A model generated the notes under the pieces. The model did not search any database. It saw nothing but the letters and a program-made list of their open reading frames with translations, and was not told the origin of the DNA. From Podarcis erhardii (Eukaryota), in the NCBI GenBank assembly GCA_964252035.1, contig OZ176201.1: DNA of 64,000 bases. One strand, given 5' to 3'. This document shows positions 4,759 through 32,402 of the stretch, piece after piece. Each line of letters opens with the position of its first letter. Within the stretch, counting starts at the first letter, position 1. The translations under genes were made by a program, and so were the position numbers.

Positions 4759-6313
4759 TGTCACTGGTTCAACACTAATCTCACGAGTGGTCAGTCTGGG
4801 TTTTTTTTTAGGAGATCTGGTTGGGAATTCAATAGACCCCTCCCTCGGTCAGCCATTGAGCACGATGGTCCCAGTCACCACCACTATTCACAGGTCAGAT
4901 GAGTGACCACGAAGGGGCAGCTGCTCAATCCATTGCTTGCTGTTGCTCTTCCTGCATGCCAGGAAGACAGAGTGGGTGAGTAGGGGCCAATGGCAAGAGG
5001 TCCATGGGGTCTGCATTGGTCTGTAGTGGGTCCTCTTCTCAGGCTTGGGTCATGGCAGGTGTCCAACCATGCCAGCCTCTGTATTTCAGCTATGAACTCA
5101 CTAAGTACCTTTTATAAGCCACTCCCTCTCCCTCTCTCATGCACAATAAGGAAATAATAATAGATGTGACGCTGAATTGTTGATTCATTACTGTAATATA
5201 TGTGGATTGCTTTGAACCTTTGAAATGCACCATATAAATGCTAATTATTAAGTACTTTTGCTATTAGGTTACATTCCAAGATTTTCTTATTGTTAGTCTC
5301 TCTAGGTCCGTTAAATTGATCTCACTTTGTGATCATGTCACCGTCTGTCTTGGGCTTGTCCCAATGTAAACAATCATTTTGTTGTTTATTAGGCTAATAT
5401 GTTTTAGACACAACATACTGTGCTGTCTCTGGAATCACCTTGTTAAGGTTGTATTACAGGCTGACCTCTATTGACAAGATTGAATTGAAGTCATTTTCTC
5501 TTAGAGCTTAGCTGCTCCGAGTATCTGTGTTGTCAGCAAATATGGCTTTTAGCACCTTTCCCTGGGGCATTATCTCAAATGTGGTGCCAGAGAGCCAGAT
5601 AGATTCACTTTCCATTTTTTAAAAACCCAATTTTTATTTTTAATTTTCCTTCTACCACCTTTCAGTTGTCACACACACTTTCCTTCTCGAAATCAATTGC
5701 AGATGTTCACAAGAGAAAATGCTGTACAACATGACTTCTGTCTAAAAAAAAAAAAAAAAAAAAAAAGCTTTCCTTAATCTCTCCACTAGGGATTTTCCCA
5801 GCGTTATCGTATAAGCATTAGTGAACACAGTCTGTTTCTGGCTGAGGATACTAATTACACCCTGGTGAGGAAAAATAATAATAATGGGGGGCAAACTCAC
5901 CCCCATCCTGAACCACCTCAAAAGTTCTGTTATTAGCATACACTCTAGCCAAGGAGATAGGAGATTAGATACGTTAACTTTTCTTCTCCTTTAGCTATGA
6001 TGTTTCCCTTCCAACTTGCTTGCACTGTTCTTTTCCTCTGTGTGAGAGAGCAAGGGGGGGAAAGTATGTGAAACAAGGTGTTAGGCACCCAGGAAATGGG
6101 CAATAAAGAGAACATGTGTGCATATGAAGCATGACTTTGCGGCAGGAATGGGGAGTCAAAGGAGGAGGGAGAGGAAAGTCAACCAAGTAATAAAATTTTC
6201 CAGTGTGACATTGCACCTATTGTGTCAGTAGTCACTATCTCCGAAAGAAGGCTGTTGAAAGAGGCTGGATGGAGTTCAGCACCTGAATATTTATATAAGC
6301 CCGGCGGGGTGGG

Positions 6314-7695: not shown

Positions 7696-8803
7696 TGTTG
7701 TTTCCATTGACAGACACCGAGGTTACATCATCCTCAGCTGGGGGAGGGAAAGTCATGCACCCTTTTAGAATAAAGGAAAATCCAGCTTATCTAGTTTAAT
7801 TACAAGAAATCTCCCTAGCCCCCCTGCTCCACCCACAAAATTACCTGGAAACTTTGCCACAAGTGATTAAGGGAGGCTCCAGCAGCATGTCTGGCTCCAT
7901 TAAACTCTCTCCTGTCATAATTCCCCAATCTTAAAACAATATAGTATTCTGGCCACATGAAGTGACAGTGCTACTCAGCTTGGCAAATGAGAGATAATTC
8001 AAGTGTGTAAGAAGAGGAAATGTTACAGGGGCCGTGTATGATTAGCTAGGGGAGGATATTAAGAATGAGAAAGATCACTGTGTACATATATTTCAGTGGT
8101 TGCCACAGAGAGCTAGAGATAAAAAAAATGCTATTCATTATTATACATCTACAGGACACGAAGTATTGGATTTGAAAAGCAGGAAAGTGGCTTCATTTTA
8201 TTTATTAAGTGAAATACTTTGCTTAATATTCATTCATTTAGCATCCATTCATTCAGTTTATATCACACATTTGCAGTGACAAATGTTCAAGTTTTCCTGG
8301 GGTAGGTTACACCAAAAAATAAAATACAGTTTTTAAAAAGTGCGAAAACAACAACAACAACTACACAACATCACAAAATGGTTGAAACAGTAGAATGATA
8401 CAAGAATAGTATTGGCTCCTGGTTTTGGAGGGCCTTTAGGCAAGACACCCTCAATCAGGGCCGGCCCACCCATGAGGAAGGGTGGCAGGATCCACAGGGG
8501 CAGCAGTTCCAGCCTTCAGCGGCAGTGGTGTCTGCTACCTGCTCCTTGGAGACTGTGTGTCTCGCTTCCTTGGCACTCCATACTCCCATGCTCCCTCTAC
8601 AGTGGCTTCTTGGGAATAGGCCTCTCCTGGAGTCAACACTATACAATCCTGTGTAGAATGTGTGGTTTTTTAAAAAAAGAATAATAATTGTGTATTTCGT
8701 GGGTATTGTAGATGCTATCACAATCTACAACTACTACCCGTATTACATTTTGGTGTGAGGGTCTTCCCACCTGGTTACTGTGCCAGGTGAAAGGTGAAAA
8801 CCC

Positions 8804-8825
8804 CCAGATGGGCGGGGTATAAATA

Positions 8826-8882
<57 letters not shown>
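8804..8882 (+). mobile_element. Minimal L2 3' tail with (ATT)n microsatellite
   Basis: CCAGATGGGCGGGGTATAAAT, matching the tail of the 24.8 kb L2, followed by about 18 ATT units. Confidence 0.7.
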
Positions 8883-10067
8883 GCTCCTCATTAGTAAAGG
8901 TGAAAGATTTCTACGATCTGAAGAGAAACCAGAGTAATTTATGCTAATAGTACTAAACAGCATTATAGTTGAATCAGTTATAGTTGGCTAATTTTTCTAT
9001 TGTGAAAGATTATCAAATAATAATACAAAATTGAAACAATAGTATAGTAACAAAAACAGTTAACATGTCTTCTAACGTTATATTTTCTTCATTATTTTAC
9101 TTTCACTTTTAAAAAATTCCCTATGAGTGAAAGATAACCGAGAGGTTAGTTTGCTCTGTATAGAATCTGATAGAATTCTTGTTTGACCTAGGTCACACAC
9201 AAAAATAATCAATATTTTTTTATCTAAATTGCTTTTGCTTATCTTTTATTTAATGTCTGAAGAAAGGCTAAAGCCTATTCAGAAATCTGCAAATCTTTCT
9301 CCTTCAAATGCCATATCAGGGTATATACGCCTGTAGTAAAGAGGAAAGTAATTACACCACAAATGCAACTCATTTGGCTAAAAATAATTGCAGGGCCAAT
9401 CATTAAAAGAACGAAAGCTTAGACTTCAAAAATTGTTATTCAATACAAGTTAGGTTTAAATATAAAGATGGATGTGTTTGTTGTACTGATGCTGAGCAGG
9501 TTGTGTGTTGTTCCTTTGGCACCCACATTCAACTAGGTGCCATCTTTATGTGCAGTTGTGGATTGAACATTAAATATTGAGCTCACAGAGTCAGTCTATA
9601 CCTGGTTGTTGTTGGCCTGCAGCAATCATTTGTTCTGATGTAATTGTGAAACACTTGGCTTGGCTATGGGTTATATGTTCAACAAGTGATGTAATAAATA
9701 TGATTGTGCCATCGCCATTAGGTAAAAGCTGTAGCACAGAAAGGAGTTGATGGCTGCAAGTCATGAGGTTTATATGCAAACACCCCCCACCCCTCCGATC
9801 ATAAGCATTATACTTTTGGGGGCCAACGATGCAAGATGTTTATTGTCTTTGTGTGCTGCTAGTGGGCTTCCCAAGAGGAACCTGATTGGGCTCTGTTAGG
9901 AAATGGAGTGCTCAGCTAGGTGGTCTAATCCACAAGGGTTCTTCTTACATTCTCATCCAAATATTGTATATCGTAGGATGTAATGAATACTGAAGCAGTG
10001 CATAAACATGTTTTAAGTATTTAAGAGTGCTGTTTTGGTAATGTCATTACTGGATTTCTTTTTTCAG

Positions 10068-10230
10068 TATGAATATTTCAATGCTGTCCTCATTAATGAG
10101 CGGGATGAAGATGGGAACTTCTTAGAACTGGGGAAGGAATTCATCCTAGAACCAAATGACCATTTTAATAACTTGCCTGTGAATGTTACCCTGAGTGATG
10201 TCCAAGTGCCAACCAACATGTACAACAAAG
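10068..10230 (+). CDS. CACNA2D3: CACNA2D3 coding exon (human exon 5 equivalent), 163 nt, phase 0-1
   Basis: tttttcAG acceptor and AAG/GTAAGT donor. Translates [54 protein letters not shown], near-identical to the recalled human alpha2delta-3 sequence. Confidence 0.97.
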
Positions 10231-11907
10231 GTAAGTGGATGTACTCCATTGTATGACATTAAAGCTGCTTCTTCACACAAGAAAGTAGTTTGATAAAGCT
10301 AGTCATTGTGAGAGTTTAAGCGACGCTAAAAGAAGCTTCTGGGAACCAATATATTAAAGTCCAACACCTTTGTAGAAAATCAAAATACAGCTAATAAATA
10401 CAAAGCAATTCATGAGAAAGTACATTTCTCAATCCTGTTCCAAATAAGGGGGAAATAATCAAATTCTGTTTTAAGTGGTGACTTCTGGGTGCTGCTCTAT
10501 CACCAAGCTAGATATTGTTGTATACTTTTGGTGCATTTTTTTCCCTGAAGCTGCCCCCCCCCAATCCCTTTGTATTGCAGTGAGTTTCTAGAAAACGCAG
10601 GAAAAGATTTTATCCGTGTTACCAGAATTATTGAGTTTTTTTCCGAGAGAGATGGTAATGTCCATGAATATTTTCAGGCATTCTTGTCAGCGGGGGATAT
10701 GTTTTACTTCAGCTCAACTGACAAATATAAAGCAAACAATATGTTGCTGAAAATTTGAAGCTGTGCTATCAAGTTTTTATATCAAAACATATGGATTGCA
10801 CAAAATGTAGGACGGGAAATTCAATCATGTGAAGAAAGACATTGAGAAAACTTGACTAATTTCCAATCATTATATTGCAGCGAATGATACTCATTCACAC
10901 CGTATAAAGTGACAAGTTATGTATCTATATGACATTTTAAATGGACCAGTTTTGCTGGTACCGTTCTGTCAGATACAGGAATGCAACTCTCCAAAAGAAA
11001 AGAAAAAGAAAAAGTCGGGATCTTTTGTTTCCCCACTCTGTAATCCATCTGTCTGCTAATCTGGAAACAAAACCAGTTTTGGAACAAAAGTTTAAGGGAA
11101 AATATTAACGTTTGGTTTCTATAGCACATTAACAATTCTTACTTCATTTATCATCCCAGCAATCCTCAGAGCAATCCTGAGGGCCTATTCAGTTATTACA
11201 TTCTGGGGAGAGCGCTTGACCCAGTATGAGCTTTGGCTGTATGTGTGTCCCTTTCCCTGTGGAAATAAAGTAATGGAGGAGCTGAGTTATACTGCCTTTA
11301 GTGGAACACAGTATTTCTAGACACCTGGTTAACATTGCTCTGTATTCTGAGGACAGATCAGGTGCTTTGGGAGAGTCTGAGTTATACTCAGTTAATTCAT
11401 GTTCACTTGACACTTGCTCTTGTTGCTGGGTGGAATGGGGAGGAATGTGAGAGGCAGTTCTCCTCCCAAACAAAATGACTGTGCAGGCCCAAAGTGATGT
11501 CATTGGCAATCTAGCGATATCATGGCTAGATGTTTCCTCAGAAGCGGTTGTGCAGATTGCTTAATATCAACACAGGTCTTTCACTTTTCAATGTACACTT
11601 TGGATGGGCTAAGCAGCTGGTTGTCACAGAGCTGAATTTGTTGTCCTTCACAGTTGCTGATATTTAGTGTGGCGTTCAATTAGATTTTGCTCTGAGTAAA
11701 CCCATAGAGGTTAATGGCCCTAACTTAGTCATGCTCATTATTATCACGATTATCGCTATGATACCTCTGTACTGGGCTCCTCTCCCCCACAACAACTTTG
11801 GAACAATCCATGCTGCAGGGCATGCAGCAGAAGCAGCAAAGGGTTGTCATAACCCCCTCCTCCCTCCCTTCTTCAGCTGAGGCCTGTCTCAAGCACCTGC
11901 CTGTTCC

Positions 11908-12366
11908 TTTAAAAGAGGATTAGTCAAATTTACAGAGGATAAGGCTACCTACACCTACCAGCCATTATGGATATGTTCTACCTTCACTGTCAAAGGCCTC
12001 TGAATATCAGTTACAGTCATACCTCAGGTTGAAGTAGTTTCAGGTTGAACATTTTCGTGTTGCTCTCTGCGGCGACCTGAATGTAATGGAGCGTGTTACT
12101 TCTGGATTTCGAAGCTCGTGCATGCGCAGACGCTCAAAATGACGTCATGAGCGGAAGTGGCGAATCGCAACCCATGCAGACGCGGGGTGCGTTCGCTTCA
12201 GGATGCAAACGGGGCTCCGGAACGGATCCCGTTTGCATCCAGAGGTACCACTGTACTGGGAATCATACAGGAGATAACTGTTGCACCCAGGTTCTGCTAA
12301 TGGGCTTTCCATGGGCCTCTGGTTGGCCACTGTGAGAACAGGATGCTGGACTAGATGGGCCATTGT
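11908..12366 (+). mobile_element. CR1-type 3' end, interrupted by a MITE
   Basis: AAAAGAGGATTAGTCAAATT...CTGAATATCAGTTA[MITE]CTGGGAATC...CTGGTTGGCCACTGTGAGAACAGGATGCTGGACTAGATGGGCCA. Confidence 0.7.
12014..12253. mobile_element. Tc1/mariner-type MITE nested in CR1 tail
   Basis: TA-CAGTCATACCTC...GAGGTACCACTG-TA, CpG-rich body. Confidence 0.8.
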
Positions 12367-15300
12367 ACAGATGACTATTTAATGGTATGGTGGGGCTGAA
12401 CAGAATCAGAACACTGGTGTGGGGGTAGATATTTTCTAATCCTACACCCACTGCAGTCCCAGTCCAGATTCCCCCCCTGAATCTGCTACTAATGTGAGAA
12501 GGACAGCTTCCATTGAGGGGAATGGTAGTTTGGCTTCAAGTGCAAAGCGTAAACATAGGAGTGGGGACTGGTCTCTGGGGATTTCAGCATCATACATCGG
12601 ACAGGAGTTAAAAGGAATGCAGCTGCAGGTATCTTGCCCACGGATAATTTAGTTTGGGTAAATGACTTTTTTACCTGCTACTGATTTCCTATTCAGGATG
12701 GCAATTTTGTTTCTTGGGTTTTTTGTTTTTTTAACAGCTAAGATAGCAACAGGGATCAAGTACATAACAAGTATATTTCTCACACTTTCCTTTCCTTTGG
12801 GCAGTAGAACAAAAACCACTCAGAAAATGTAGAAAATAACTAAGTATAGTGAAACAGATGGGGTTGTATCGTATTATTTTGTTATGTTATGTGTTGTTAA
12901 CTAATTGTTTTTTTTAAAAAAAGAAACTTTACAAAGACTGGATTCCCCCCACCCCCAGTTCAGATCTCTGTGGGACATGCATTTGTAGTTTGATTTTGTC
13001 ATTTGCTTCTCCCAGCTCAGCAGTTATGGTGATGGTAGACTCCAAACTTTGATTTTTGAAAGTGAACTTAAAAGGTCTCTTAATCTTTATGGCCCAGTGA
13101 GAGGGAGAGAAGGCCACGTGGGGGGGGGAGGCGTAACCCCATCTCATGGCTTTCTCTGGCTCCCCTGCATACTATGAGTTGATTTGCTGAAAGTTGATAA
13201 ATGCAAACTGTAATCAATGCTCTGATTGCCTTGGAGAAGAAGTTCTTCTGAGTGTATAGAGCCTTCTCAAAAATATATTGCAATGTGATGAACCACAGCC
13301 ACTTTTGATGAAGTAGGGTTTTTTCAATTTGCCACTTAAAAGGAGCTATGAATATCATTCAGTCATACTTCCCTAGCAGCTCTTTCCAAGTGACTGTCAA
13401 GCTAAGATTACCTATTTTCTAAGATATTATAACTAGAAATTTTTCATCCCTTGAATGATGCATATTGATTGTAGTCTATATATATACATCTATCTTCTAG
13501 CCGAGTAGTGAAGACCTGAAATAAAATTTCACCTGTCACCGCTGTGTTTAATTTGTTAGCTTTCATGGCTGATAAGCCTTTATGCACCATGGAGCTGAAA
13601 ATACCTGTATGCTGGACACCAGATTTTTGAAAATGGATATAGCGGCATGCAACCTTGTACTTCTCTTCATCTATGAAACAGTAAATTAAGTTTGCTGTTA
13701 GATTGTGTGCGACTTTGGAATAACGATTGTACCTTGTATCTTAGGCAAGGGACCCCCCCCCCCAGCTAAGTAATTTCATTTATGCAAGATTTTTATAATA
13801 GTATTATACTCTCAAGGGGTTCGTGAGGCAGACCTGATGATGTCGCAAGCATAAACAGAGGAGAGGAATGGGAAGCCACAAAATCCATGAAAGAAAAGTT
13901 TAGGAAGCCTCCAGGTGCACAGAAATAGGTTTCTTGAGCCAAAAATATTCTGCAACGAAATTGGAAGCTAAGACTCAAGGTGGTTGTGCCTAAGAGTGAT
14001 ATATTTCTAAATAAACTCACGTCTGTGCCCCCATGTTGTAATTTTGGAATCAAACATTGACCCTAGCAAGTAAAACAAAAAGATCATGTGGCTATTTCAA
14101 ATCTCATTGTGGGTATTTCATATGATCTGTTTGGTACAGTATGTTCAGTTCATTGACAAAAAGCATATAAACAAAGGGGATGAAACAAAGGGGTTGGGAA
14201 AATGCAATAGACAACCAAAAGGTGTCTCTCTGCAACTCTGCCCCATCCCAGCTTATCTTGTTTGGTAAAAGAGGTGAGTGGGATGTGCAGTAGCCCTGAT
14301 TCTAGGCATTAGTTACATGCTGGGGAGATACTGGTGGGGAGATACCAGCAGCACTTTGTAGAAATGTCCTATAATGTAAATTGAGTGTACCATGTATTGA
14401 TGTTTTCCAGCACCAGCTTTCTTTCAACAAGTGATCTAATCTTTTCGCAAGCAGGAATAGATTTTTATTTGTATTCCACAGAGCTATTTTCTTTGAGGCA
14501 CCATTATTTATAATAGCTTCCCTCCAAGCCTGCGTTCCTGCAAAACTGCTCCATTGTTTAAATTGATAGCCTGCTTGTTCACAGTTCACTGCTGTGGATT
14601 TTTCAGCCACAGTCCCCACACCAGGGACGAAGTGGCTGAGCTCCGGGGATGGGCTAAATGAAATAAATATATTTATACCATACATCTGAAGAGTTCTCAT
14701 GAGCAGGATGTTTCATTTGTTTCTGTTTTTTGCTTCTGTTTTGTTTTTTAAAATCTATCCCTTGTCCAGTTTGTGATCAATCCACCCCCGGAATGTTTAC
14801 AGCAAAGGCCACAATAAAAATGCAATAAATAAATAAATGAGAGTGCAATCCTTGGTAGGGGGACACATATCTCTGGACTAGAGATATTGCTTTCAGTATG
14901 AATAACAGAATACTATTTTGCCCTTTCAACCAAAAACAGATGCAATAGCTGCCATGAAAATATGCATTTGGGAGCTAGTCTAAACCTTTGCACTCAATGG
15001 CAAATGACGTCATAATCAGTACTTTCCGAAGTCCTTTGGGATTGGCAATGCCAGGCTTACATTCAGATGGTTGTGAGGCAAATGTAAATATTACAACATT
15101 TATTTATAGTATAGAAGGAAGGTTTAAAGATCTACAAAAGATACATGCACACTTTTTCTTAAACACTTATTCCATGGTGGGATTTCTTCACTCTGTTATC
15201 TTAGAATATGGTAATTATTCATTTCTCCTTTCTATATAAAACAGATCACACTTTGGAACTGTATTGGAAAAAAAAGAAAGATGCCCTCTACTTGCTTAGC

Positions 15301-24790: not shown

Positions 24791-26690
24791 AATAATAATA
24801 ATAATAATAATAATTTATTATTTGTACCCCGCCCATCTGGCTGGGTTTGCCCAGCCACTCTGGGCGGCTTCCATAAAAACCAGAAATACACTAAAATATC
24901 ACAGATTAAAAACTTCCCTGAACAGGGCTGCCTTAAGATGTCTTCTGAATGTCAGGTAGTTATTTATCGCTTTGACATCTGATGGGAGGGCGTTCCACAA
25001 GGCGGGTGCCACTACCGAGAAGGCCCTCTGCCTGGTTCCCTGTAGCTTTGCTTCTCGTAATGAGGGAACCGCCAGAAGGCCCTCGGCGCTGGACCTCAGC
25101 GTCCGGGCAGAACGATGGGGGTGGAGACGCTCCTTCAGGTATACTGGGCCGAGGCCGTTTAGGGCTTTAAAGGTCAACACCAGCACTTTGAATTGTGCTC
25201 GGAAACGTACTGGGAGCCAATGTAGGTCTTTCAAGACCGGTGTTATGTGGTCTCGGCGGCTGCCCCCAGTCACCAGTCTAGCTGCCGCATTCTGGATTAG
25301 TTGTAGTTTCCGAGTCACCTTCAAAGGTAGCCCCACGTAGAGCGCATTGCAGTAGTCCAAGCGGGAGATAACTAGAGCATGCACCACTCTGGCGAGACAG
25401 TCCGCGGGCAGGTAGGGTCTCAGCCTGCGTACCAGGTGGAGTTGGTAGACAGCTGCCCTGGATACAGAATTGACCTGCGCCTCCATGGACAGCTGTGAGT
25501 CCAAAATGACTCCCAGGCTGCGCACCTGGTCCTTCAGGGGCACAGTTACCCCATTCAGGACCAGGGAGTCCTCCACACCAGCCCGCCCCCTGTCCCCCAA
25601 AAACAGTACTTCTGTCTTGTCAGGATTCAACCTCAATCCATTAGACGCCATCCATCCTCCAACCGCCTCCAGGCACTCACACAGGACCTTCACCGTCTTC
25701 ACTGGTTCTGATTTGAAAGAGAGGTAGAGCTGGGTATCATCTGCATATTGATGGACACCCAGTCCAAACCCCCTGATGATCTCTCCCAGCGGCTTCATAT
25801 AGATGTTAAAAAGCATGGGGGAGAGGACGGAACCCTGAGGCACCCCACAAGTGAGGGCCCAGGGGTCTGAACACTCATCCCCCACCACCACTTTCTGAAC
25901 ACGGCCCAGGAGGAAGGAGCGAAACCAGTGTATAACAGTGCCCCCAGCTCCCAGCCCCTCTAGACGGTCCAGAAGGATGTTATGGTCGATTGTATCAAAG
26001 GCCGCTAAGAGATCCAGCAGAACTAGGAAACAGCTCTCACCTTTGTCCCTAGCTCGCCGGAGATCATCAACCAGCGCGACCAAGGCAGTTTCAGTCCCAT
26101 GATGAGGCCTGAATCCCGATTGGAAGGGATCCAAATGGTCCGCATCCTCCAGGCGTGCCTGGAGTTGTTCAGCAACCACGCGCTCAATCACCTTGCCCAA
26201 GAATGGAAGATTTGAGACTGGGCGATAGTTGGCCATACTGGCCGGGTCTAAAGATGGTTTTTTAAGAAGCGGTTTGATGACCGCCTCTTTCAGCAGATTT
26301 GGGAATGCTCCCTCACAGAGGGAAGCATTCACCACCCTGCAGAGCCCATCACCCAGCCCTTCCCGGCTTGCTTTTATTAGCCAGGATGGGCAAGGATCCA
26401 GGAGACAGGTGGTTGGTTTCACGCGTCCAAGCAGCCTGTCCACATCCTCGGGGGTAATGGATTGAAATCGATTCCATGCAACTTGACCAGACAGAGCTCT
26501 AGCACTCTCCCGCCCCAGCCCTGCTCCCACGGTGGTGTCTAGCTCCTTCCGAATATGAGTGATTTTATCTGCAAAAAACTTTGCAAAATCGTTGCAGGAG
26601 ATCTTGGGGGTCTTTACAAAGCCCCGGTGGTAAAGGTGGTTCCGTTAAATTACGAACCACCTGAAAAAGTCTCCTGCTACTTGAGAACTC
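24791..26690 (-). mobile_element. Young 5'-truncated L2-clade LINE with 3' tail
   Basis: RT ORF followed by the tail ...CCAGATGGGCGGGGTACAAATAATAAAT(TAT)n. L2-like codons (RRLFQVVRNL, FAKFFADKITHIR) extend upstream of the ORF-track start to about 26690. Confidence 0.9.
24899..26530 (-). pseudogene. L2 ORF2 reverse transcriptase, C-terminal 543 codons, open
   Basis: Motifs NYRPVSNLPFLGK, QSGFRPHHGTETAL, DL(L)AAFDTIDH, GVPQGSVLSP, YADDTQLY, RLDYCN and LHWLPV. No endonuclease domain is present in the window. Confidence 0.9.
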
Positions 26691-26732
26691 TCTCACTGTT
26701 AATGGTTCAGGCTGGAACACAGAAATCCACTT

Positions 26733-26888
26733 TATGCTGAGTCAGATCCTTTGTCCTTCTAGCTCAGTACTACATCTAGCTCAATATTGTCTGCTCTAAC
26801 TGGCAGTGTCTTTCCAGGGTTTTAGGCAGGAGATACCATGATTGAACTTGACACCATTTGTGTGCAAGGTACCACTGAGCCATGAACC
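26733..26888 (-). mobile_element. Squam3-like tRNA-derived SINE
   Basis: GAGTCAGA...CTAGCTCA.TATTGTCT...GATTGAACTTG...ACCACTGAGC matches the recalled reverse consensus. Confidence 0.6.
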
Positions 26889-27721
26889 TTATCCAGTCCA
26901 GACATTACACTAAACCATTGTTAAGGAAGCTTAACAATGTTTAGTTTTATATTTGATTTAACAAACTATGATCGTCTGACAAACCAGAATCAGAACCAAT
27001 GGTTTCAGCAAACTATGATTAATCATGTGTCTTAATTGGTAAACCATAATTACAGTTGTTGCTCAGCCTCCTGAGGCTGCTGCATGTGAAGATGGGAGAG
27101 TGCTGAACAGCTGGAAAATGAAAGCAAGAACACGGCTCATGTGCATATTTGGAAATTCAAACCATGGTTTAGATTGGGGTTGGACAATCAGCAGCCCTAG
27201 AGATACATGCAACTCCTGTTGTAATTTCATGTGACCCTTGGACTAATTTCATAAGCCCTCTGCAGATGATCAATTCAAACATCTGGTAAGAGCTGCCTGT
27301 TGCAGCTGAGTGGTTGGGAGGGAGGAAAAGAAGTGGTGCTTCCTACAGCTGTCTTCATGCCTCCTGCTGTTGGCATGTGTGGCTCTCACAGATGGCCCTC
27401 CAGGGAATGTATCCTCAATGGAAAAATGACTGCTCACCTCTGTTATTTTATTTCTTTATTTCTTTATTTCTTTATGAAAATTATACAGACAGCAACATGA
27501 AGAAGTCTAAGTTAGCATTGCCTTCTACCAATAAGAAATAATAATAACTATTACAATAATGAAAATACACAGCTCTGTGTTATATTTACTCTAGATTTAT
27601 CCACCACCTTCCATGCCCAAAGTCTCCTCAGAGCATCAACATACCTTGTGTTTAGTTTATACTGGATGGGGCCATTGTTACAAGAGCTCACTGGACTCTT
27701 TCCCTGGGCTTGTCCTTTGTC

Positions 27722-27994
27722 CTACTTTCTGCCATCTTCATCTTTAAATAAAAATTTAGGTGACAGGCTCTCTTTTGCATATATCACCACACCTCTCTTC
27801 TTGACTCTGTCTGAAGATATAAATTCCTGGCCAAGTCTTTTGTTTATTAACACTTTTCTGTGGAGCCTAGTCACATGTGTTTCTTGTAAGCAAATAATGT
27901 CCAATTGTTCCTTTTTTAATATATAAAAAAAATTCCTCCTTTTTTCCGGGCTGTTACAGCCATTTATGTTCCAACTCAAGAGTTGCAGAGACAT
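27722..27994 (-). pseudogene. N-terminal fragment of L1 ORF2 (APE endonuclease), ending inside the TSD
   Basis: MSLQLLSWNINGCN...DIICLQETH...KKRGVVI...KDEDGR are canonical L1 EN motifs. The TAG stop lies within the target-site duplication. Confidence 0.88.
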
Positions 27995-28009
27995 CCTGGA
28001 TAAATCTGG

Positions 28010-29062
28010 TTATTTTTCTGGGGGTGGTACCTTATTCGCTGGATCTTCAGAGTCCAAGGGTGCAGGTACCCCTGGTGCTCCAGGGCCGGAAGGTAAATCA
28101 ATTCCTTTTTGAAGGTCCTCTCCGTATGCCGACAGAAATTTATCTCTGTCTTCCAGTGTTCTAATTTTAACCTTCTTCCCTCTAAAAGTAAAAGATAGTC
28201 CTTGAGGGAACTCCCACCTGAAAATAATTGAATTGCTCCTCAACAGTCTAACCAGTTCCAAATAGTCAGATCTAAGGTCCAGCAGTTGTTTAGGAATGTC
28301 CTTGTAAATCTCAATTCTTTTGTCCGAAATATCCAGTGACTTTCCGTAATGTAGGCCTAAAATCTTGTCCCTTTCCTCCTTTGATCTCAATATTATCAAA
28401 CAGTCTCTGGGCTTCTCTTTCTTTATTAGTCTTCCAAGCCTAAAAGCTGATACAATTTTAAAGTCCTTTTCCTCTAATTTCCAGAACTTGGAAAATTCTT
28501 TAGTCAAAAACTCAGCTAAGTTGCCTTCTTCCGCTTCTGGTACCGACCTTATCCTTAAGTTACTCTCCCTGTTTCGTAGTTCTAACATAGACAGATAGGT
28601 CTGGTGTTCACCTACTTGTTTACCGAGTGGTCTTACCTCTTGTTCTAACTTTCCAAGTCTTTGGCTGGTATCCTCAGCCAATTTCCTATTTTCATCTGTA
28701 GCCTGTGTCAGTTCTCCAATTGCTTGTACATTCTGTGCTACTTGTCCGGTTAATCTATTTAGGCACTCTGTATTTTGATCAATTTTGGCTGTTTGTTCAT
28801 CAGCTTTTTTATCCAAAGATTCCACTCTTTTATCCAAGGATTCCAATTTTTCAAAGATTTTCTCTAAAATAGATGCAGATGCTCCTGAGGCCATATCTTC
28901 CAATTGTAATTCCTCAGTTTCTCCCTCCCCTGCCCGTGGCAGAGAAGCAGCTTCTTCCTCAGAAGGCAAAGTAGGCACAGATGATCTACGTGTCTGTGAG
29001 GCTGCAGTTAAAGTTGTTAAAGTTGTTTGTCTAGCTCTTCCCCTCTTTCTTGCGCCACTCAT
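28010..29062 (-). CDS. L1 ORF1 protein (coiled coil + RRM + CTD), 350 aa, uninterrupted
   Basis: Heptad coiled coil (LEKIFEKLESLDKRVESLDKK...). RESNLRIRSVPE matches the RRxNLRIxGxPE RRM motif. AFRLGR, KPRDCLI, IEIYKD and FRWEFP are typical of vertebrate L1 ORF1p. Confidence 0.9.
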   Translation of the reverse strand: MSGARKRGRARQTTLTTLTAASQTRRSSVPTLPSEEEAASLPRAGEGETEELQLEDMASGASASILEKIFEKLESLDKRVESLDKKADEQTAKIDQNTECLNRLTGQVAQNVQAIGELTQATDENRKLAEDTSQRLGKLEQEVRPLGKQVGEHQTYLSMLELRNRESNLRIRSVPEAEEGNLAEFLTKEFSKFWKLEEKDFKIVSAFRLGRLIKKEKPRDCLIILRSKEERDKILGLHYGKSLDISDKRIEIYKDIPKQLLDLRSDYLELVRLLRSNSIIFRWEFPQGLSFTFRGKKVKIRTLEDRDKFLSAYGEDLQKGIDLPSGPGAPGVPAPLDSEDPANKVPPPEK

Positions 29063-29639
29063 TCCAGAGTTATCTCAAAGTCAAGGTCACACTGAGTTGT
29101 TCCCATGCGAAAGCACCAGCCCAGATGGTAACAGTCAAACAGGAGGCCGGGGAAATGAAAGTAGAATAATGTCACTGCTGTAAATCCCAAATCCTCTAGG
29201 GGGAGTTTAAAATGTCTTTAGGGAAGAGATTAAAATCAAGTTTAAAGTCCAGGAACCTTCAATAATAAGTTTTTAGCAGAGTTAGTGTTAGCAGCCACAA
29301 TGTTTCAGACAGTGCATACTGGTATTCCAAATGATGCTTCAAAGTAACAAGTCCAAACTCCCTCAGATTGTTTCAAAATTTAAATTCAAAGTATCCAACT
29401 CTGCAAACTGACTGCTCAGTTGCTCAGGCAGCTCCAACACCTGGGTTTCTTACTTAAATTGTAAATCCAATAGAAGAAGGGTATCACCATACAAGTAAAA
29501 AGCAAAAAAGCATAAAATCCAAAACTTAGAGTCCTTATTCAGCTTACAAGAAAGTTCAGTAGATGCTCAGATCCATTAAGTTAAAAGTTCTCTCTTTGCC
29601 TCCACTCCTCCAGCTCTTTGCGTTAAAGTTCAATGACAG

Positions 29640-30056
29640 CGGAAGATGGACTTCCTGTTTTTCGTCACTCCGCTTTCAGCCAAATTCAGTGTTTTTTAGT
29701 CCCGAAATTTTATAAGGTCCGTTATTACTCACGGGTTGTTGCTTTTCCGAATCACAAATTCCAGGAAGAAAGGTCAGCGCTCACCGGCAGCAGCAGCGCG
29801 GCTTCACTCCGTTGATTGCGGAACGACCCACAGCGCCGCTGCCCCCTCCCCGTTCCGGAGCCCCTTACGGGGTTCCTTCAACGTTTCGGGGGTTGCTCCT
29901 GGTGCCCGCTGGGTCCCAAGACCACAGGCTTTTGCTGCCTGTGGTTTTCCGATGTGGGTCTCCGCTTCGCCGTAGCGGACGACCCGTCTCAACGGAGCTC
30001 CCTCTCCACAGTTAGAAGAGGGCAGCCATTGCCGTTCGCGCCGCCTCCGGAAGTCC
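29640..30056 (-). promoter_or_regulatory. CpG-rich L1 internal promoter (first part of 5'UTR)
   Basis: Abundant undecayed CpG in an otherwise CpG-poor intron, and a 5'-terminal ACTTCCGG (ETS-like CCGGAAGT on +). Promoter function is inferred from general L1 biology. Confidence 0.6.
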
Positions 30057-31000
30057 CCTTTGTCCTACTTTCTGCCCCTACTGTTCCACCAATATCCTGT
30101 TATAGGCTCACTATTGGGACTTTGTTCCCCTACTATTCTATATGTGAGAGCTCGCCTCTCATCTTATTTGAATGCTGCTTTAGAGGGCACCACACTCTTA
30201 TCTCTGGGCCTATAAGGTGCTCACGCTACAAGGGAAATGTGTCCTTATGGTTCCTTTCGCTCTGCTTCTGGTCCACTCAGCTTTCATCTTTCTGATTCCT
30301 CATCAGGCCTATGCCTCCCATTCAGTGTTTCTGCTTTATTTCTGAACGCTGAGGGGAACAACACCATCACCGCTGCCTCTTCACACCTGGTTTAGGTTCT
30401 AAGCATGATGTCTGAATGGAATAGCATTAATAATCAGTATTTCAGAAGTGGAATCTAATTCCCTTATTATTTGTCTGAAGTTTGAATTGAATTCCAGGGT
30501 AGGATTACAGTGTATTCAAATTACATCCTCAGAGTTTAATCCCTAATTATTGCTTGGACTTTAAATACATGTTCAGGCCTCCTGGAACTATATAACTTGG
30601 GCATAAATTGTGAGGTCACATGTTTGAATGCCCCATCAAAAATTCCCAGCATTTAGAAAAATTCTTGTCAGCAGGAAGACTAGGCATTTCTTCCTGCCAT
30701 GCTGGTACTTTCAAGGAAGAAAGTTTCTGACACTGGGAGACATTCAGATATTTGTTTGTAGCCTGAAGACAACTGTATCTCATGCTTTTCTGTATGTGTA
30801 GTTTGGCTCTTAGCTAGCCCAACAATCAAAACAATATTCATCATAAATAGTTTCAGTTTAAAAAGTCACATATTAAAGGCAATGTTGGCCCAGAACATTT
30901 TGCTACCTGAAATAGATCCCAAATGAGGCCAACACAACTTGCAGCACCAAGCAGTACATACATCTTGCTTTCTTCTGTTCCAGGGACATTATCTATCTCC

Positions 31001-31046
<46 letters not shown>

Positions 31047-32402
31047 TTCTCCCAATGTAGTCATGCAGATTTCAGACCATGTTTAATTTCATATATGTAA
31101 TAATTTCCAGGGGTCATTTTCAGCTGTTGATTCCTGTTGGGAAACAGTTGCTGTGAAACTTTTACTCAGGTGCCCAGAGTCTGGTCTCAAAAACATGGAG
31201 GTAATTAATGGGGAAAGGAACAGTCAGCAAACATACTAAGCCATAAATATCAAGACCACAGCTCCCCCAGCACCTGTCTTGGAACTCTCTTACCATCCTC
31301 CAGTCCCTTCGGAGCCTTCACCCCTCCCCTGGTAAGGCAGGTCCTTCTTCGTCCTGTGGGTTATCAGGGAATTCATTTGGCTTCACACTTTAAAAACAGC
31401 AACAGCCATATTGGCAGTCATCTTGAATTTGAGGTAGAACCTCATTGTTAGATCAATCAAAATTCAGTTTCAATATCTCATCATACATAAAATCCAGCCT
31501 CAACGGCTAAGGCTACTTGAACTGCCTACAAGCAATAAAAATGTACCTGTTTTAATAGCACTCCCTGAGCTGGGTTGCTTCAGTGTGCTGCATGACAGAG
31601 CCAACCCAGATTAAAGCTTTCTAACGTTGCTCTTTAATTCAGTTTTTTGGGACTGATTCCTTAACCTGGCAGATTTCACTTCCTTGCAGTGTTGTTTCCA
31701 TTTCTTTTACATTTTGACACCAGAAGGCACCACAGTTCAGTCAAGCAGGAAATGTGTTTGATTATTCTCTAGTTGATATCCACATGTCACTAGGAAGGAT
31801 CAAATATGGTTCTAATTACTCTGTGATCAATGATAAAAACACTCACGAATTCATCCCATAAGTTGCAGCCCTAATGCCATTATTAGAGTGTGGTTAATTC
31901 TTTTCCTCCATCATGATTTGAATACCAAGTAGTAACAGTAACAGTGAATAAAAATGACAATGGTAATGTCCTTTAACATACTTTTCTATGATCCACTAAT
32001 CAGAGACATTACCTCAGTATGATCATAGGATCTGTACCAAAATGTCTGGACACCCAGCCTGTGAGTAATACCATTAGGCGTGATGACAGTAATCACTGTT
32101 GGCAAGTTAGTTTAGAGGAGGAGCGTTGGCACAACATGGCCCTGCCAGTTCCCGTCTTCTAGCATAGTGAGTATCTTAATCACCCTGTGAAAGACACTAA
32201 CTGTGTTGTGGGAATGGCCTTTGATCTAAAGTCAGTTGTGAGGAATTCTGTAATGTAGCTATTTCAATTATCATTCCCCACCCCAACAAAGAAAAAGCAT
32301 TTAGCCAGTCTGGACAGTGAATAAGAATACTAGACTTCTCTTTCAAACTTTGAAACATAAAAAATTGTTTTTGCTATTCTACCCTGTTTCTTCTCTCTCC
32401 AG

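What the first reader, a model, noticed from the sequence alone, without database searches (positions are those of the whole stretch)
27714..30076. L1 with intact 5' end and ORF1, truncated at the 3' end, tail-less, yet flanked by a perfect 20-bp TSD
Seen: CCTTTGTCCTACTTTCTGCC occurs at both 27714-27733 and 30057-30076. One copy abuts the L1 5' start. The other begins exactly where ORF2 reaches KDED-GR, and the TSD itself supplies GGC AGA (G-R of the conserved DxxGR endonuclease motif) and then a TAG stop. There is no poly(A) or other tail, and the TSD does not start with an A-run. Established: ordinary TPRT gives 5'-truncated, 3'-intact copies, and internal priming is a described rare route in primates. 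Inference: reverse transcription was primed internally through about 6 nt of microhomology and ran to the RNA 5' end. A later deletion would have removed the 3' TSD.
Basis: partly seen in the sequence, partly recalled or inferred. Interest (0 to 1): 0.7.

Follow-up and report, generated by a model that had tools for sequence, protein, structure and literature searches.

The report
Tail-less 3'-truncated lizard L1 insertion
A young lizard LINE-1 copy that kept its first 2.3 kb but lacks the remaining ~3.7 kb and the poly(A) tail is a genuine single insertion with a 20-base target duplication, most likely because copying began inside the RNA; such events are rare but already described in primates and noted in anole lizards.

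Summary
The exact 20-mer occurs only at 27714-27733 and 30057-30076. It brackets a minus-strand L1 piece of 2,323 bp: a 994-nt 5'UTR, an intact 350-aa ORF1, a 15-nt spacer and ORF2 codons 1-87. There is no tail.

Contigs of three related organisms carry the empty site with a single 20-mer at single-copy depth. The best-holding run shows the filled 5' junction. So this is a real, recent insertion with a true TSD.

The 5' end matches the canonical lizard clade-1 L1 start and the starts of two Podarcis lilfordi copies. A related full-length copy ends in AATAAA plus poly(A), so the missing tail is abnormal for this L1 group.

All eight relatives that cross the truncation point continue GGA-AGA/AGG. 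The TSD's first 7 nt (GGCAGAA) therefore match the L1 continuation at 5-6 of 7 positions and diverge afterwards (chance about 0.004-0.01). The source element's own letters are unknown.

Best reading (0.7): target-primed reverse transcription primed internally by short microhomology at a non-T-rich nick and run to the RNA 5' end. A later microhomology-mediated deletion of a full-length insertion is not excluded (about 0.12).

This is a known kind of event (internal priming, tailless retrocopies), so it is a clean lizard example, not a new mechanism.

The parts
30057..30076 (.). TSD copy next to the L1 5' end
   Evidence: Exact 20-mer. The empty-site contigs of X1, X18 and X19 hold one copy only (table 5: both = 20).
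27714..27733 (.). TSD copy next to the truncated L1 3' end. On the + strand its 3' end (...TTTCTGCC) is the inferred primer for first-strand cDNA.
   Evidence: The primer role is inferred from TPRT geometry.
27734..30056 (-). L1 fragment of 2,323 bp, 5'-complete and 3'-truncated, about 38% of a ~6.1-kb element
   Evidence: BLAST to related copies L002-L011. The related full-length copy L010 runs 7875-13965.
29063..30056 (-). 5'UTR of 994 nt starting GGACTTCCGG...AATGGC, with a CpG-rich first 300 nt (CpG o/e 0.92)
   Evidence: It matches the lizard clade-1 5' terminus consensus GACTTCCGGTG-N8-ATGGCG (PMC5381506). It also matches the 5' ends of L010 and L011. CpG count.
28010..29062 (-). ORF1, 350 aa, intact
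   Evidence: Homologues are 80% and 75% identical in Logan contigs and 51% identical to Podarcis L1 ORF1 proteins.
27995..28009 (-). 15-nt spacer between ORF1 and ORF2
27734..27994 (-). ORF2 codons 1-87 (N-terminal part of the APE-type endonuclease), ending ...KDED
   Evidence: Pfam PF03372, E 8.7e-9. 234/261 nt identical to L010 and 229/261 to L002.
27727..27733 (-). Junction microhomology: GGCAGAA of the TSD overlaps the L1's own Gly-Arg codons
   Evidence: All BLAST alignments to relatives end at 27727-27729. Relatives read GGAAGAA, GGAAGGA or GGAAGAT. A paralogous contig of X18 is laid up to 27727 (record 17).

Best explanation
This is one recent retrotransposition of a full-length lizard clade-1 L1 RNA in which first-strand synthesis started inside the RNA instead of on the poly(A) tail.

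Inferred steps:
1. The + strand of the target was nicked between ...CCTACTTTCTGCC and CCTACTG....
2. Its free 3' end (...TTCTGCC-3') annealed to the Gly-Arg codons 88-89 of ORF2 (GG[A/C]AGAA).
3. The L1 reverse transcriptase copied from there to the capped 5' end of the RNA.
4. A second nick 20 bp away on the other strand, followed by fill-in, produced the 20-bp TSD.

Shown: the insertion is real and lineage-specific, the TSD is a true duplication of one target 20-mer, the 5' end is canonical, the tail is absent, and the junction overlaps the L1 continuation.

Not shown: the order of events, whether the nick was made by the L1 endonuclease or already existed, and whether the RNA was intact or already cut at that point.

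The product is a dead-end copy. It keeps an intact promoter region and ORF1 but has no endonuclease or RT.
For: - Exact 20-bp repeat, 0 expected by chance.
- Empty site with a single 20-mer in one single-copy-depth contig each of X1, X18 and X19. Their flanks differ from the window by about 1%, 3% and 1%.
- X15 (flanks 0-1 differences) shows the filled 5' junction contig 30035-30986 and no empty joint.
- The 5' terminus is canonical: it fits the lizard clade-1 consensus (PMC5381506). Two independent P. lilfordi copies begin homology within 3 nt of 30056 and have unrelated upstream DNA. This points to an RNA copied to its 5' end.
- The related full-length copy L010 ends in AATAAA plus poly(A). 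L011 has poly(A) plus a ~20-bp TSD starting with A's. A 20-bp TSD is therefore normal and the missing tail is abnormal.
- Relatives continue GGAAGAA, GGAAGGA or GGAAGAT where the TSD reads GGCAGAA, then diverge. In an L1 RNA proxy, 0.4% of positions match at 6 or more of 7 nt, and 1.0% begin with GG and match at 5 or more of 7.
- Precedent: 2-18 nt complementarity at tailless retrocopies; 90 3'-truncated, 5'-complete, TSD-flanked L1s in human; tailless forms also in the anole (PMC5322556). Internal priming is summarised in PMC5402677.
Against: - The source element's letters at the junction are unknown. The closest relatives in hand (88-90% identical here) have GGA, so pairing may be only 2 contiguous nt plus 3-4 more.
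- Matches of that quality occur at about 26-63 places along a 6-kb L1 RNA, so the microhomology is weak as a specificity determinant.
- The nick site (CTGCC/CCTAC) is not T-rich/A-rich like described internal-priming sites (TT/WAAAA).
- The predicted accessibility of the priming site in relatives is not raised.
- No read-level support for the 3' junction was listed for X15.
- A later microhomology-mediated deletion gives the same end product.
Confidence: 0.7

Rival explanations
1. An ordinary full-length, poly(A)-tailed insertion with this TSD came first. A later microhomology-mediated deletion (end joining or replication slippage) between GGNAGAA at ORF2 codons 88-89 and GGCAGAA at the start of the 3' TSD then removed about 3.7 kb plus the tail.
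For: The same 5-7-nt microhomology sits at exactly the two required breakpoints. The end product would be identical, and nothing in the sequence dates the truncation relative to the insertion.
Against: It needs two unusual events. The first is a classical poly(A)-primed insertion at a primer ending ...CTGCC with no T's; compare L011, whose TSD starts with A's next to its tail. The second is a deletion whose 3' breakpoint falls exactly at the tail/TSD boundary, within a short time. The time is short because the insertion is absent from organisms whose flanks differ by only ~1% and the first 300 nt of the 5'UTR keep their CpGs (o/e 0.92).
Confidence: 0.12
2. Endonuclease-independent capture: L1 RNA or cDNA was used to patch a pre-existing staggered break, with microhomology annealing. 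This is a sub-variant of internal priming without an L1 endonuclease nick.
For: Neither inferred nick resembles the TTTT/AA-type site (one search prints the empty-site context). 3' truncation and lack of a tail are hallmarks of endonuclease-independent insertions. PMC5402677 reports, citing Srikanta 2009, that internal priming may occur at staggered breaks and still give TSDs.
Against: Described endonuclease-independent L1 insertions typically lack TSDs and often delete target DNA (my knowledge of Morrish 2002 and Sen 2007, not read here). Here the TSD is a perfect 20 bp, the usual length for this L1 group (L011), and the site is otherwise intact. The + strand upstream of the nick is pyrimidine-rich, which is compatible with a degenerate endonuclease site.
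Confidence: 0.1
3. DNA-level event or artefact. Either a templated repair or segmental copy of a genomic L1 5' half, or an assembly error that dropped the rest of the element.
For: No independent contig across the 3' junction was listed for the best-holding run.
Against: The insert starts at the canonical transcription-start terminus. It is bounded by a TSD whose single-copy state is seen in three other organisms. An assembler does not join sequences on a 7-nt overlap. The filled 5' junction is seen in X15 contigs.
Confidence: 0.05

Closest known systems
Internal-priming L1/Alu insertions in hominins (Srikanta et al. 2009, Gene 448:233; known here only through PMC5402677, ref. 26)
   Same: 3'-truncated or tail-less element flanked by TSDs. 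Reverse transcription is taken to start inside the RNA where the target 3' end can pair. It does not always use an L1 endonuclease site.
   Different: The described cases mostly prime on internal A-rich stretches at T-rich nicks. Here the paired stretch is GG[C/A]AGAA inside the endonuclease coding region and the primer ends in CC. The host is a lacertid lizard.
Tailless retropseudogenes (Schmitz 2004; Noll et al. 2015, PMC5322556)
   Same: L1-driven, 3'-truncated, tail-less, TSD-flanked, 5'-complete retrocopies with 2-18 nt target/template complementarity. The paper counts 90 3'-truncated L1s with TSDs in human and reports tailless forms in the green anole.
   Different: Most described templates are small RNAs (tRNA, 5S, U2, 7SK). 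Their target consensus is TT/WAAAAWW, which this site does not fit. The preference for single-stranded template regions was not seen here.
Endonuclease-independent / non-classical L1 insertions (Morrish 2002; Sen 2007; from my knowledge)
   Same: 3' truncation, no poly(A), microhomology at the junction, no endonuclease consensus.
   Different: Those lack TSDs and often carry target deletions. This one has a perfect 20-bp TSD and an otherwise intact target.
Twin priming (Ostertag and Kazazian 2001; from my knowledge)
   Same: A target 3' end primes internally on L1 RNA by microhomology.
   Different: Twin priming leaves an inverted 5' part joined to a tailed 3' part. Here there is no inversion and no tailed part.
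Half-L1 (HAL1-like) ORF1-only elements noted elsewhere in this genome (s1-220626, s1-263167; unchecked notes)
   Same: L1 promoter plus ORF1 without a reverse transcriptase.
   Different: Those are families that keep the L1 3' end and tail. This is a single tail-less copy with an ORF2 stub.

Membership tests
Lizard clade-1 L1 (LINE-1) | Conserved 5' terminus GACTTCCGGTG-N8-ATGGCG and a long CpG-rich 5'UTR | tested here: met
   The element starts GGACTTCCGGAG...AATGGC, with a 994-nt UTR and CpG o/e 0.92 in the first 300 nt. Consensus from PMC5381506. L010 and L011 start alike.
Lizard clade-1 L1 (LINE-1) | ORF1 homologous to L1 ORF1 proteins | tested here: met
   51-80% identity to lizard L1 ORF1 proteins, one named 'L1 transposable element RRM domain-containing'. 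Pfam itself gave only coiled-coil noise.
Lizard clade-1 L1 (LINE-1) | ORF2 with APE endonuclease and reverse transcriptase | tested here: not met
   Only the first 87 codons of the endonuclease are present (PF03372). RT is absent from this copy. Relatives L007 and L010 continue.
Lizard clade-1 L1 (LINE-1) | AATAAA plus poly(A) 3' end | tested here: not met
   Absent in this copy. Present in the related copies L010 and L011.
Internal-priming / tailless retrocopy | True TSD shown by an empty site with one copy of the repeat | tested here: met
   Joint 27713->30057, both = 20, in X1, X18 and X19.
Internal-priming / tailless retrocopy | 3'-truncated template, no tail, 5' part complete | tested here: met
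Internal-priming / tailless retrocopy | The start of the TSD is complementary to the template just 3' of the truncation | tested here: met
   5-6 of 7 nt in eight relatives, with homology ending after nt 7. Chance is 0.004-0.01. The source copy was not available.
Internal-priming / tailless retrocopy | A-rich priming stretch at a TT/WAAAA-type nick | tested here: not met
   The nick context is CTGCC/CCTAC and the TSD starts GGCAGAAAG.
Endonuclease-independent L1 insertion | No TSD, often with a target deletion | tested here: not met
   Perfect 20-bp TSD. The empty site is otherwise collinear.
Twin priming | Inverted 5' segment joined to a tailed 3' segment within one TSD | tested here: not met
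   A single collinear alignment to relatives, with no inversion.
Half-L1 (non-autonomous ORF1-only family) | Several copies sharing the same deleted structure and an L1 3' end with tail | tested here: inconclusive
   There is no tail here, and no other copy in the window. All eight relatives that cross the point run on into ORF2. A genome-wide count was not possible.

The most novel reading that the evidence does not exclude
The copy is a self-contained ORF1-only transcription unit: an intact CpG-rich promoter, an open ORF1, an 87-codon ORF2 stub closed by a stop from the TSD, and three AATAAA motifs 266-287 nt downstream in the flank (window about 27447-27468, minus strand). If it is transcribed and polyadenylated there, internal priming would be a one-step route to trans-mobilisable half-L1 progenitors of the kind other notes report in this genome. 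It would also suggest that lizard L1 RT readily primes on non-A microhomology.
Probability: 0.1. Interest if true: 0.5.

Novelty: new member of a known kind. Interest (0 to 1): 0.3.

Why it matters
This is a clean, very young example of an L1 insertion that began inside the RNA, and its empty site was found. It comes from a lineage (lacertid lizards) where L1 mechanics are inferred almost entirely from mammals. It shows that the lizard machinery can make a normal-length TSD and reach the RNA 5' end without any poly(A) pairing, at a nick that is not T-rich. It does not change the model, because the same outcome is documented for L1 and small RNAs in primates and tailless retrocopies are reported for the anole. 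Its value is as one data point for a genome-wide census of priming rules, and as a caution that 5'-complete L1 copies with an intact ORF1 are not necessarily autonomous.

Tried and rejected
- Other copies in the window: none by blastn or tblastn. The family sequence therefore had to come from outside.
- Exact look-up of the window's ORF1 and ORF2 stub in the protein collection: not on record. Sibling copies from the same genome, and hence the source element's letters at the junction, could not be fetched.
- The 90-aa ORF2 stub as a protein query gave only 48-66% relatives because of the length window. Re-querying with the 164-aa partial ORF2 of L002 found the useful P. lilfordi copies.
- Premature polyadenylation: rejected. 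There is no A-run at the junction, and the nearest upstream AATAAA is about 110 nt away.
- 20-mer as part of the L1: rejected. Relatives diverge from it after 7 nt at the 3' side and have unrelated DNA upstream of their 5' ends.
- Ancestral insertion lost by precise excision in the other organisms: rejected as unparsimonious. The most divergent organism (~3%) and both ~1% organisms are empty.
- Single-strandedness of the priming site in relatives' RNA: inconclusive (23rd-30th percentile in two, 70th-81st in one).
- Srikanta 2009 (PMC2784234) is not held. It is cited only second-hand.
The N run in L011 was left as it is.
Full report
**What is there**

The 20-mer CCTTTGTCCTACTTTCTGCC occurs exactly twice in the 64-kb window, at 27714-27733 and 30057-30076. 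No further match appears even with three mismatches, and none is expected in shuffles. The bases on either side of the two copies differ, so the repeat is exactly 20 bp.

The 2,323 bp between the copies (27734-30056) are an L1 fragment on the minus strand:
- a 994-nt 5'UTR (30056-29063);
- an open 350-aa ORF1 (29062-28010);
- a 15-nt spacer;
- ORF2 from its ATG at 27994 through 87 codons, ending ...KDED at 27734.

The repeat then supplies GGC AGA AAG TAG, that is G, R, K and a stop. The ORF2 stub matches the endonuclease/exonuclease/phosphatase family (PF03372, E 8.7e-9). ORF1 finds lizard L1 ORF1 proteins: 80% and 75% identity in Logan contigs, and 51% to Podarcis proteins, one of them named L1 RRM domain-containing. 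There is no A-run, microsatellite or other tail at the 3' junction. No other copy of the element lies in the window.

**Is the repeat a real target-site duplication?**

Yes. I laid the contigs of four public runs on 26700-31100. Three of them (X1, X18 and X19, three differently labelled organisms) each hold one contig at single-copy depth that joins 27713 directly to 30057. The joint skips 2,343 bases, and 20 letters fit either side. This is the empty site with a single 20-mer.

Their flanks differ from the window by about 1% (X1: 17 differences in 1,848 laid letters), 3% (X18) and 1% (X19).

The best-holding run X15 has flanks that are identical (0/846 and 1/952 differences). It shows a contig across the filled 5' junction (30035-30986) and no empty joint. 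X15 may be the sample the assembly came from, so it is not independent support.

The state in the three other organisms, including the most divergent one, makes a single recent gain the parsimonious reading. No contig across the 3' junction was listed for X15. The output itself warns that a hole proves nothing.

**Is the 5' end the true L1 start?**

The element begins GGACTTCCGGAG...AATGGC. Boissinot and Sookdeo give GACTTCCGGTG-N8-ATGGCG as the conserved 5' extremity of lizard clade-1 L1. They describe long CpG-rich 5'UTRs and short or absent intergenic regions for that clade (PMC5381506).

Two independent copies from the Podarcis lilfordi assembly (L010, L011) begin their homology within 3 nt of window position 30056. 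They carry similar motifs and have unrelated DNA upstream. The insert therefore starts at the family's canonical terminus, as expected if an RNA was copied to its 5' end.

**What does an ordinary copy look like?**

- L010 is a ~6.1-kb related copy, 234/261 nt identical in the ORF2 stub. It ends in AATAAA followed by poly(A).
- L011 has a poly(A) run followed by a ~20-bp TSD that begins with A's. Its internal N run was left untouched.
- PMC5381506 states that L1 ends with AATAAA and a poly(A) tail in all species examined.

A 20-bp TSD is therefore normal here. The missing ~3.7 kb and the missing tail are not.

**Does the TSD continue the L1?**

Eight related copies cross the truncation point. 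Six are Logan contigs of one family (L002, L005-L009). The other two are L010 and L011.
- Every BLAST alignment to the window ends at 27727-27729, that is 5-7 nt into the TSD.
- A paralogous contig of X18 is likewise laid up to 27727 (record 17).
- Relatives read GGAAGAA-TCC, GGAAGGA-TTT and GGAAGAT-ACC where the window reads GGCAGAA-AGT.

The TSD's first 7 nt match them at 5-6 of 7 positions, and homology stops after that.

In an L1 RNA proxy, 0.4% of positions match at 6 or more of 7 nt, and 1.0% start with GG and match at 5 or more of 7. The overlap is therefore unlikely to be chance at a given junction. However, some 26-63 equally good sites exist along a 6-kb RNA.

The letters of the true source element are unknown. 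Near-identical siblings exist in the runs: 327 contigs at least 99% alike in X15. Their sequences could not be retrieved.

**Mechanism**

In TPRT geometry the cDNA strand of this insert is the window's + strand. Its primer is therefore the + strand 3' end ...CCTACTTTCTGCC, nicked before CCTACTG. That end can pair with GG[C/A]AGAA in ORF2, and the cDNA then runs to the RNA 5' end. A second nick on the other strand, between 27713 and 27714, gives the 20-bp duplication.

This is the internal-priming or tailless route:
- Noll et al. report 2-18 nt target/template complementarity. They count 90 3'-truncated L1s with TSDs against 708 full-length ones in human, and find tailless retrocopies in the green anole as the only non-mammal (PMC5322556).
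- PMC5402677 summarises Srikanta et al. 2009, including that internal priming need not use an L1 endonuclease site and can still give TSDs.

Two things differ here from the described consensus. The priming stretch is not A-rich and the nick is not TT/WAAAA-like. The predicted RNA accessibility of the site in relatives is unremarkable. I cannot tell whether the nick was made by the L1 endonuclease (the upstream strand is pyrimidine-rich) or already existed. I also cannot tell whether the RNA was intact or already cut at that point.

**Rivals**

A microhomology-mediated deletion between the internal GGNAGAA and the GGCAGAA that opens the 3' TSD would leave exactly this structure with the TSD intact. 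I rate it about 0.12, because it needs two unusual events in a short time:
- a poly(A)-primed insertion at a primer with no terminal T's;
- a 3.7-kb deletion ending exactly at the tail/TSD boundary.

The time is short because the insertion is absent from organisms with ~1% divergent flanks, and the first 300 nt of the 5'UTR keep their CpGs (o/e 0.92).

Other readings:
- Premature polyadenylation is rejected. There is no A-run, and the nearest AATAAA is about 110 nt upstream.
- Twin priming is rejected because there is no inversion.
- A half-L1 family is unlikely. There is no tail, and all relatives in hand run on into ORF2. A genome-wide count was not possible.
- An assembly artefact is unlikely, given the canonical 5' end, the TSD and the X15 junction contig.

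**Verdict**

The kind of event is already known, so this is a new member of a known kind, in a lacertid lizard. The priming site and nick site are atypical. Interest is 0.3.

Noticed in passing
window 27447-27470 (minus strand): A short (GAAATAAA)x3 repeat gives three AATAAA motifs 266-287 nt downstream of the truncated L1 in its own orientation. It is a possible polyadenylation site for read-through transcripts of this ORF1-only copy. The reads tool skipped 27443-27476 as a repeat.
   Followed up: partly
window 25988-26524 (minus strand): Reverse-transcriptase fragment (Pfam RVT_1, E 6e-11) only 26% identical to the L1 ORF2 of L007. It looks like an older copy of a different retroelement, about 1.2 kb from the insertion.
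   Followed up: partly
window 26700-26846 and 27435-27581: Contig depth in all four runs is 100-1000 times the single-copy level here, so the left flank of the insertion holds other high-copy repeats. At 27511 nearly all laid contigs read A where the window has G.
   Followed up: no
window 28085, 28132, 28687, 28705, 28748, 29076, 29647 and others: At these L1 positions nearly all laid family contigs in all four runs carry a different letter from this copy (table 3). These are either private substitutions or subfamily-diagnostic sites and could help find the source subfamily.
   Followed up: no
L011:12039-12125: A P. lilfordi L1 copy with a poly(A) run and a ~20-bp TSD (AGAAGAGACAACCATTTTTGG) lies next to an N run inside the element. 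It served as the example of an ordinary insertion, and the gap was not filled.
   Followed up: yes
window 5744-5766: A 23-nt A-run, possibly the tail of another retroposon.
   Followed up: no
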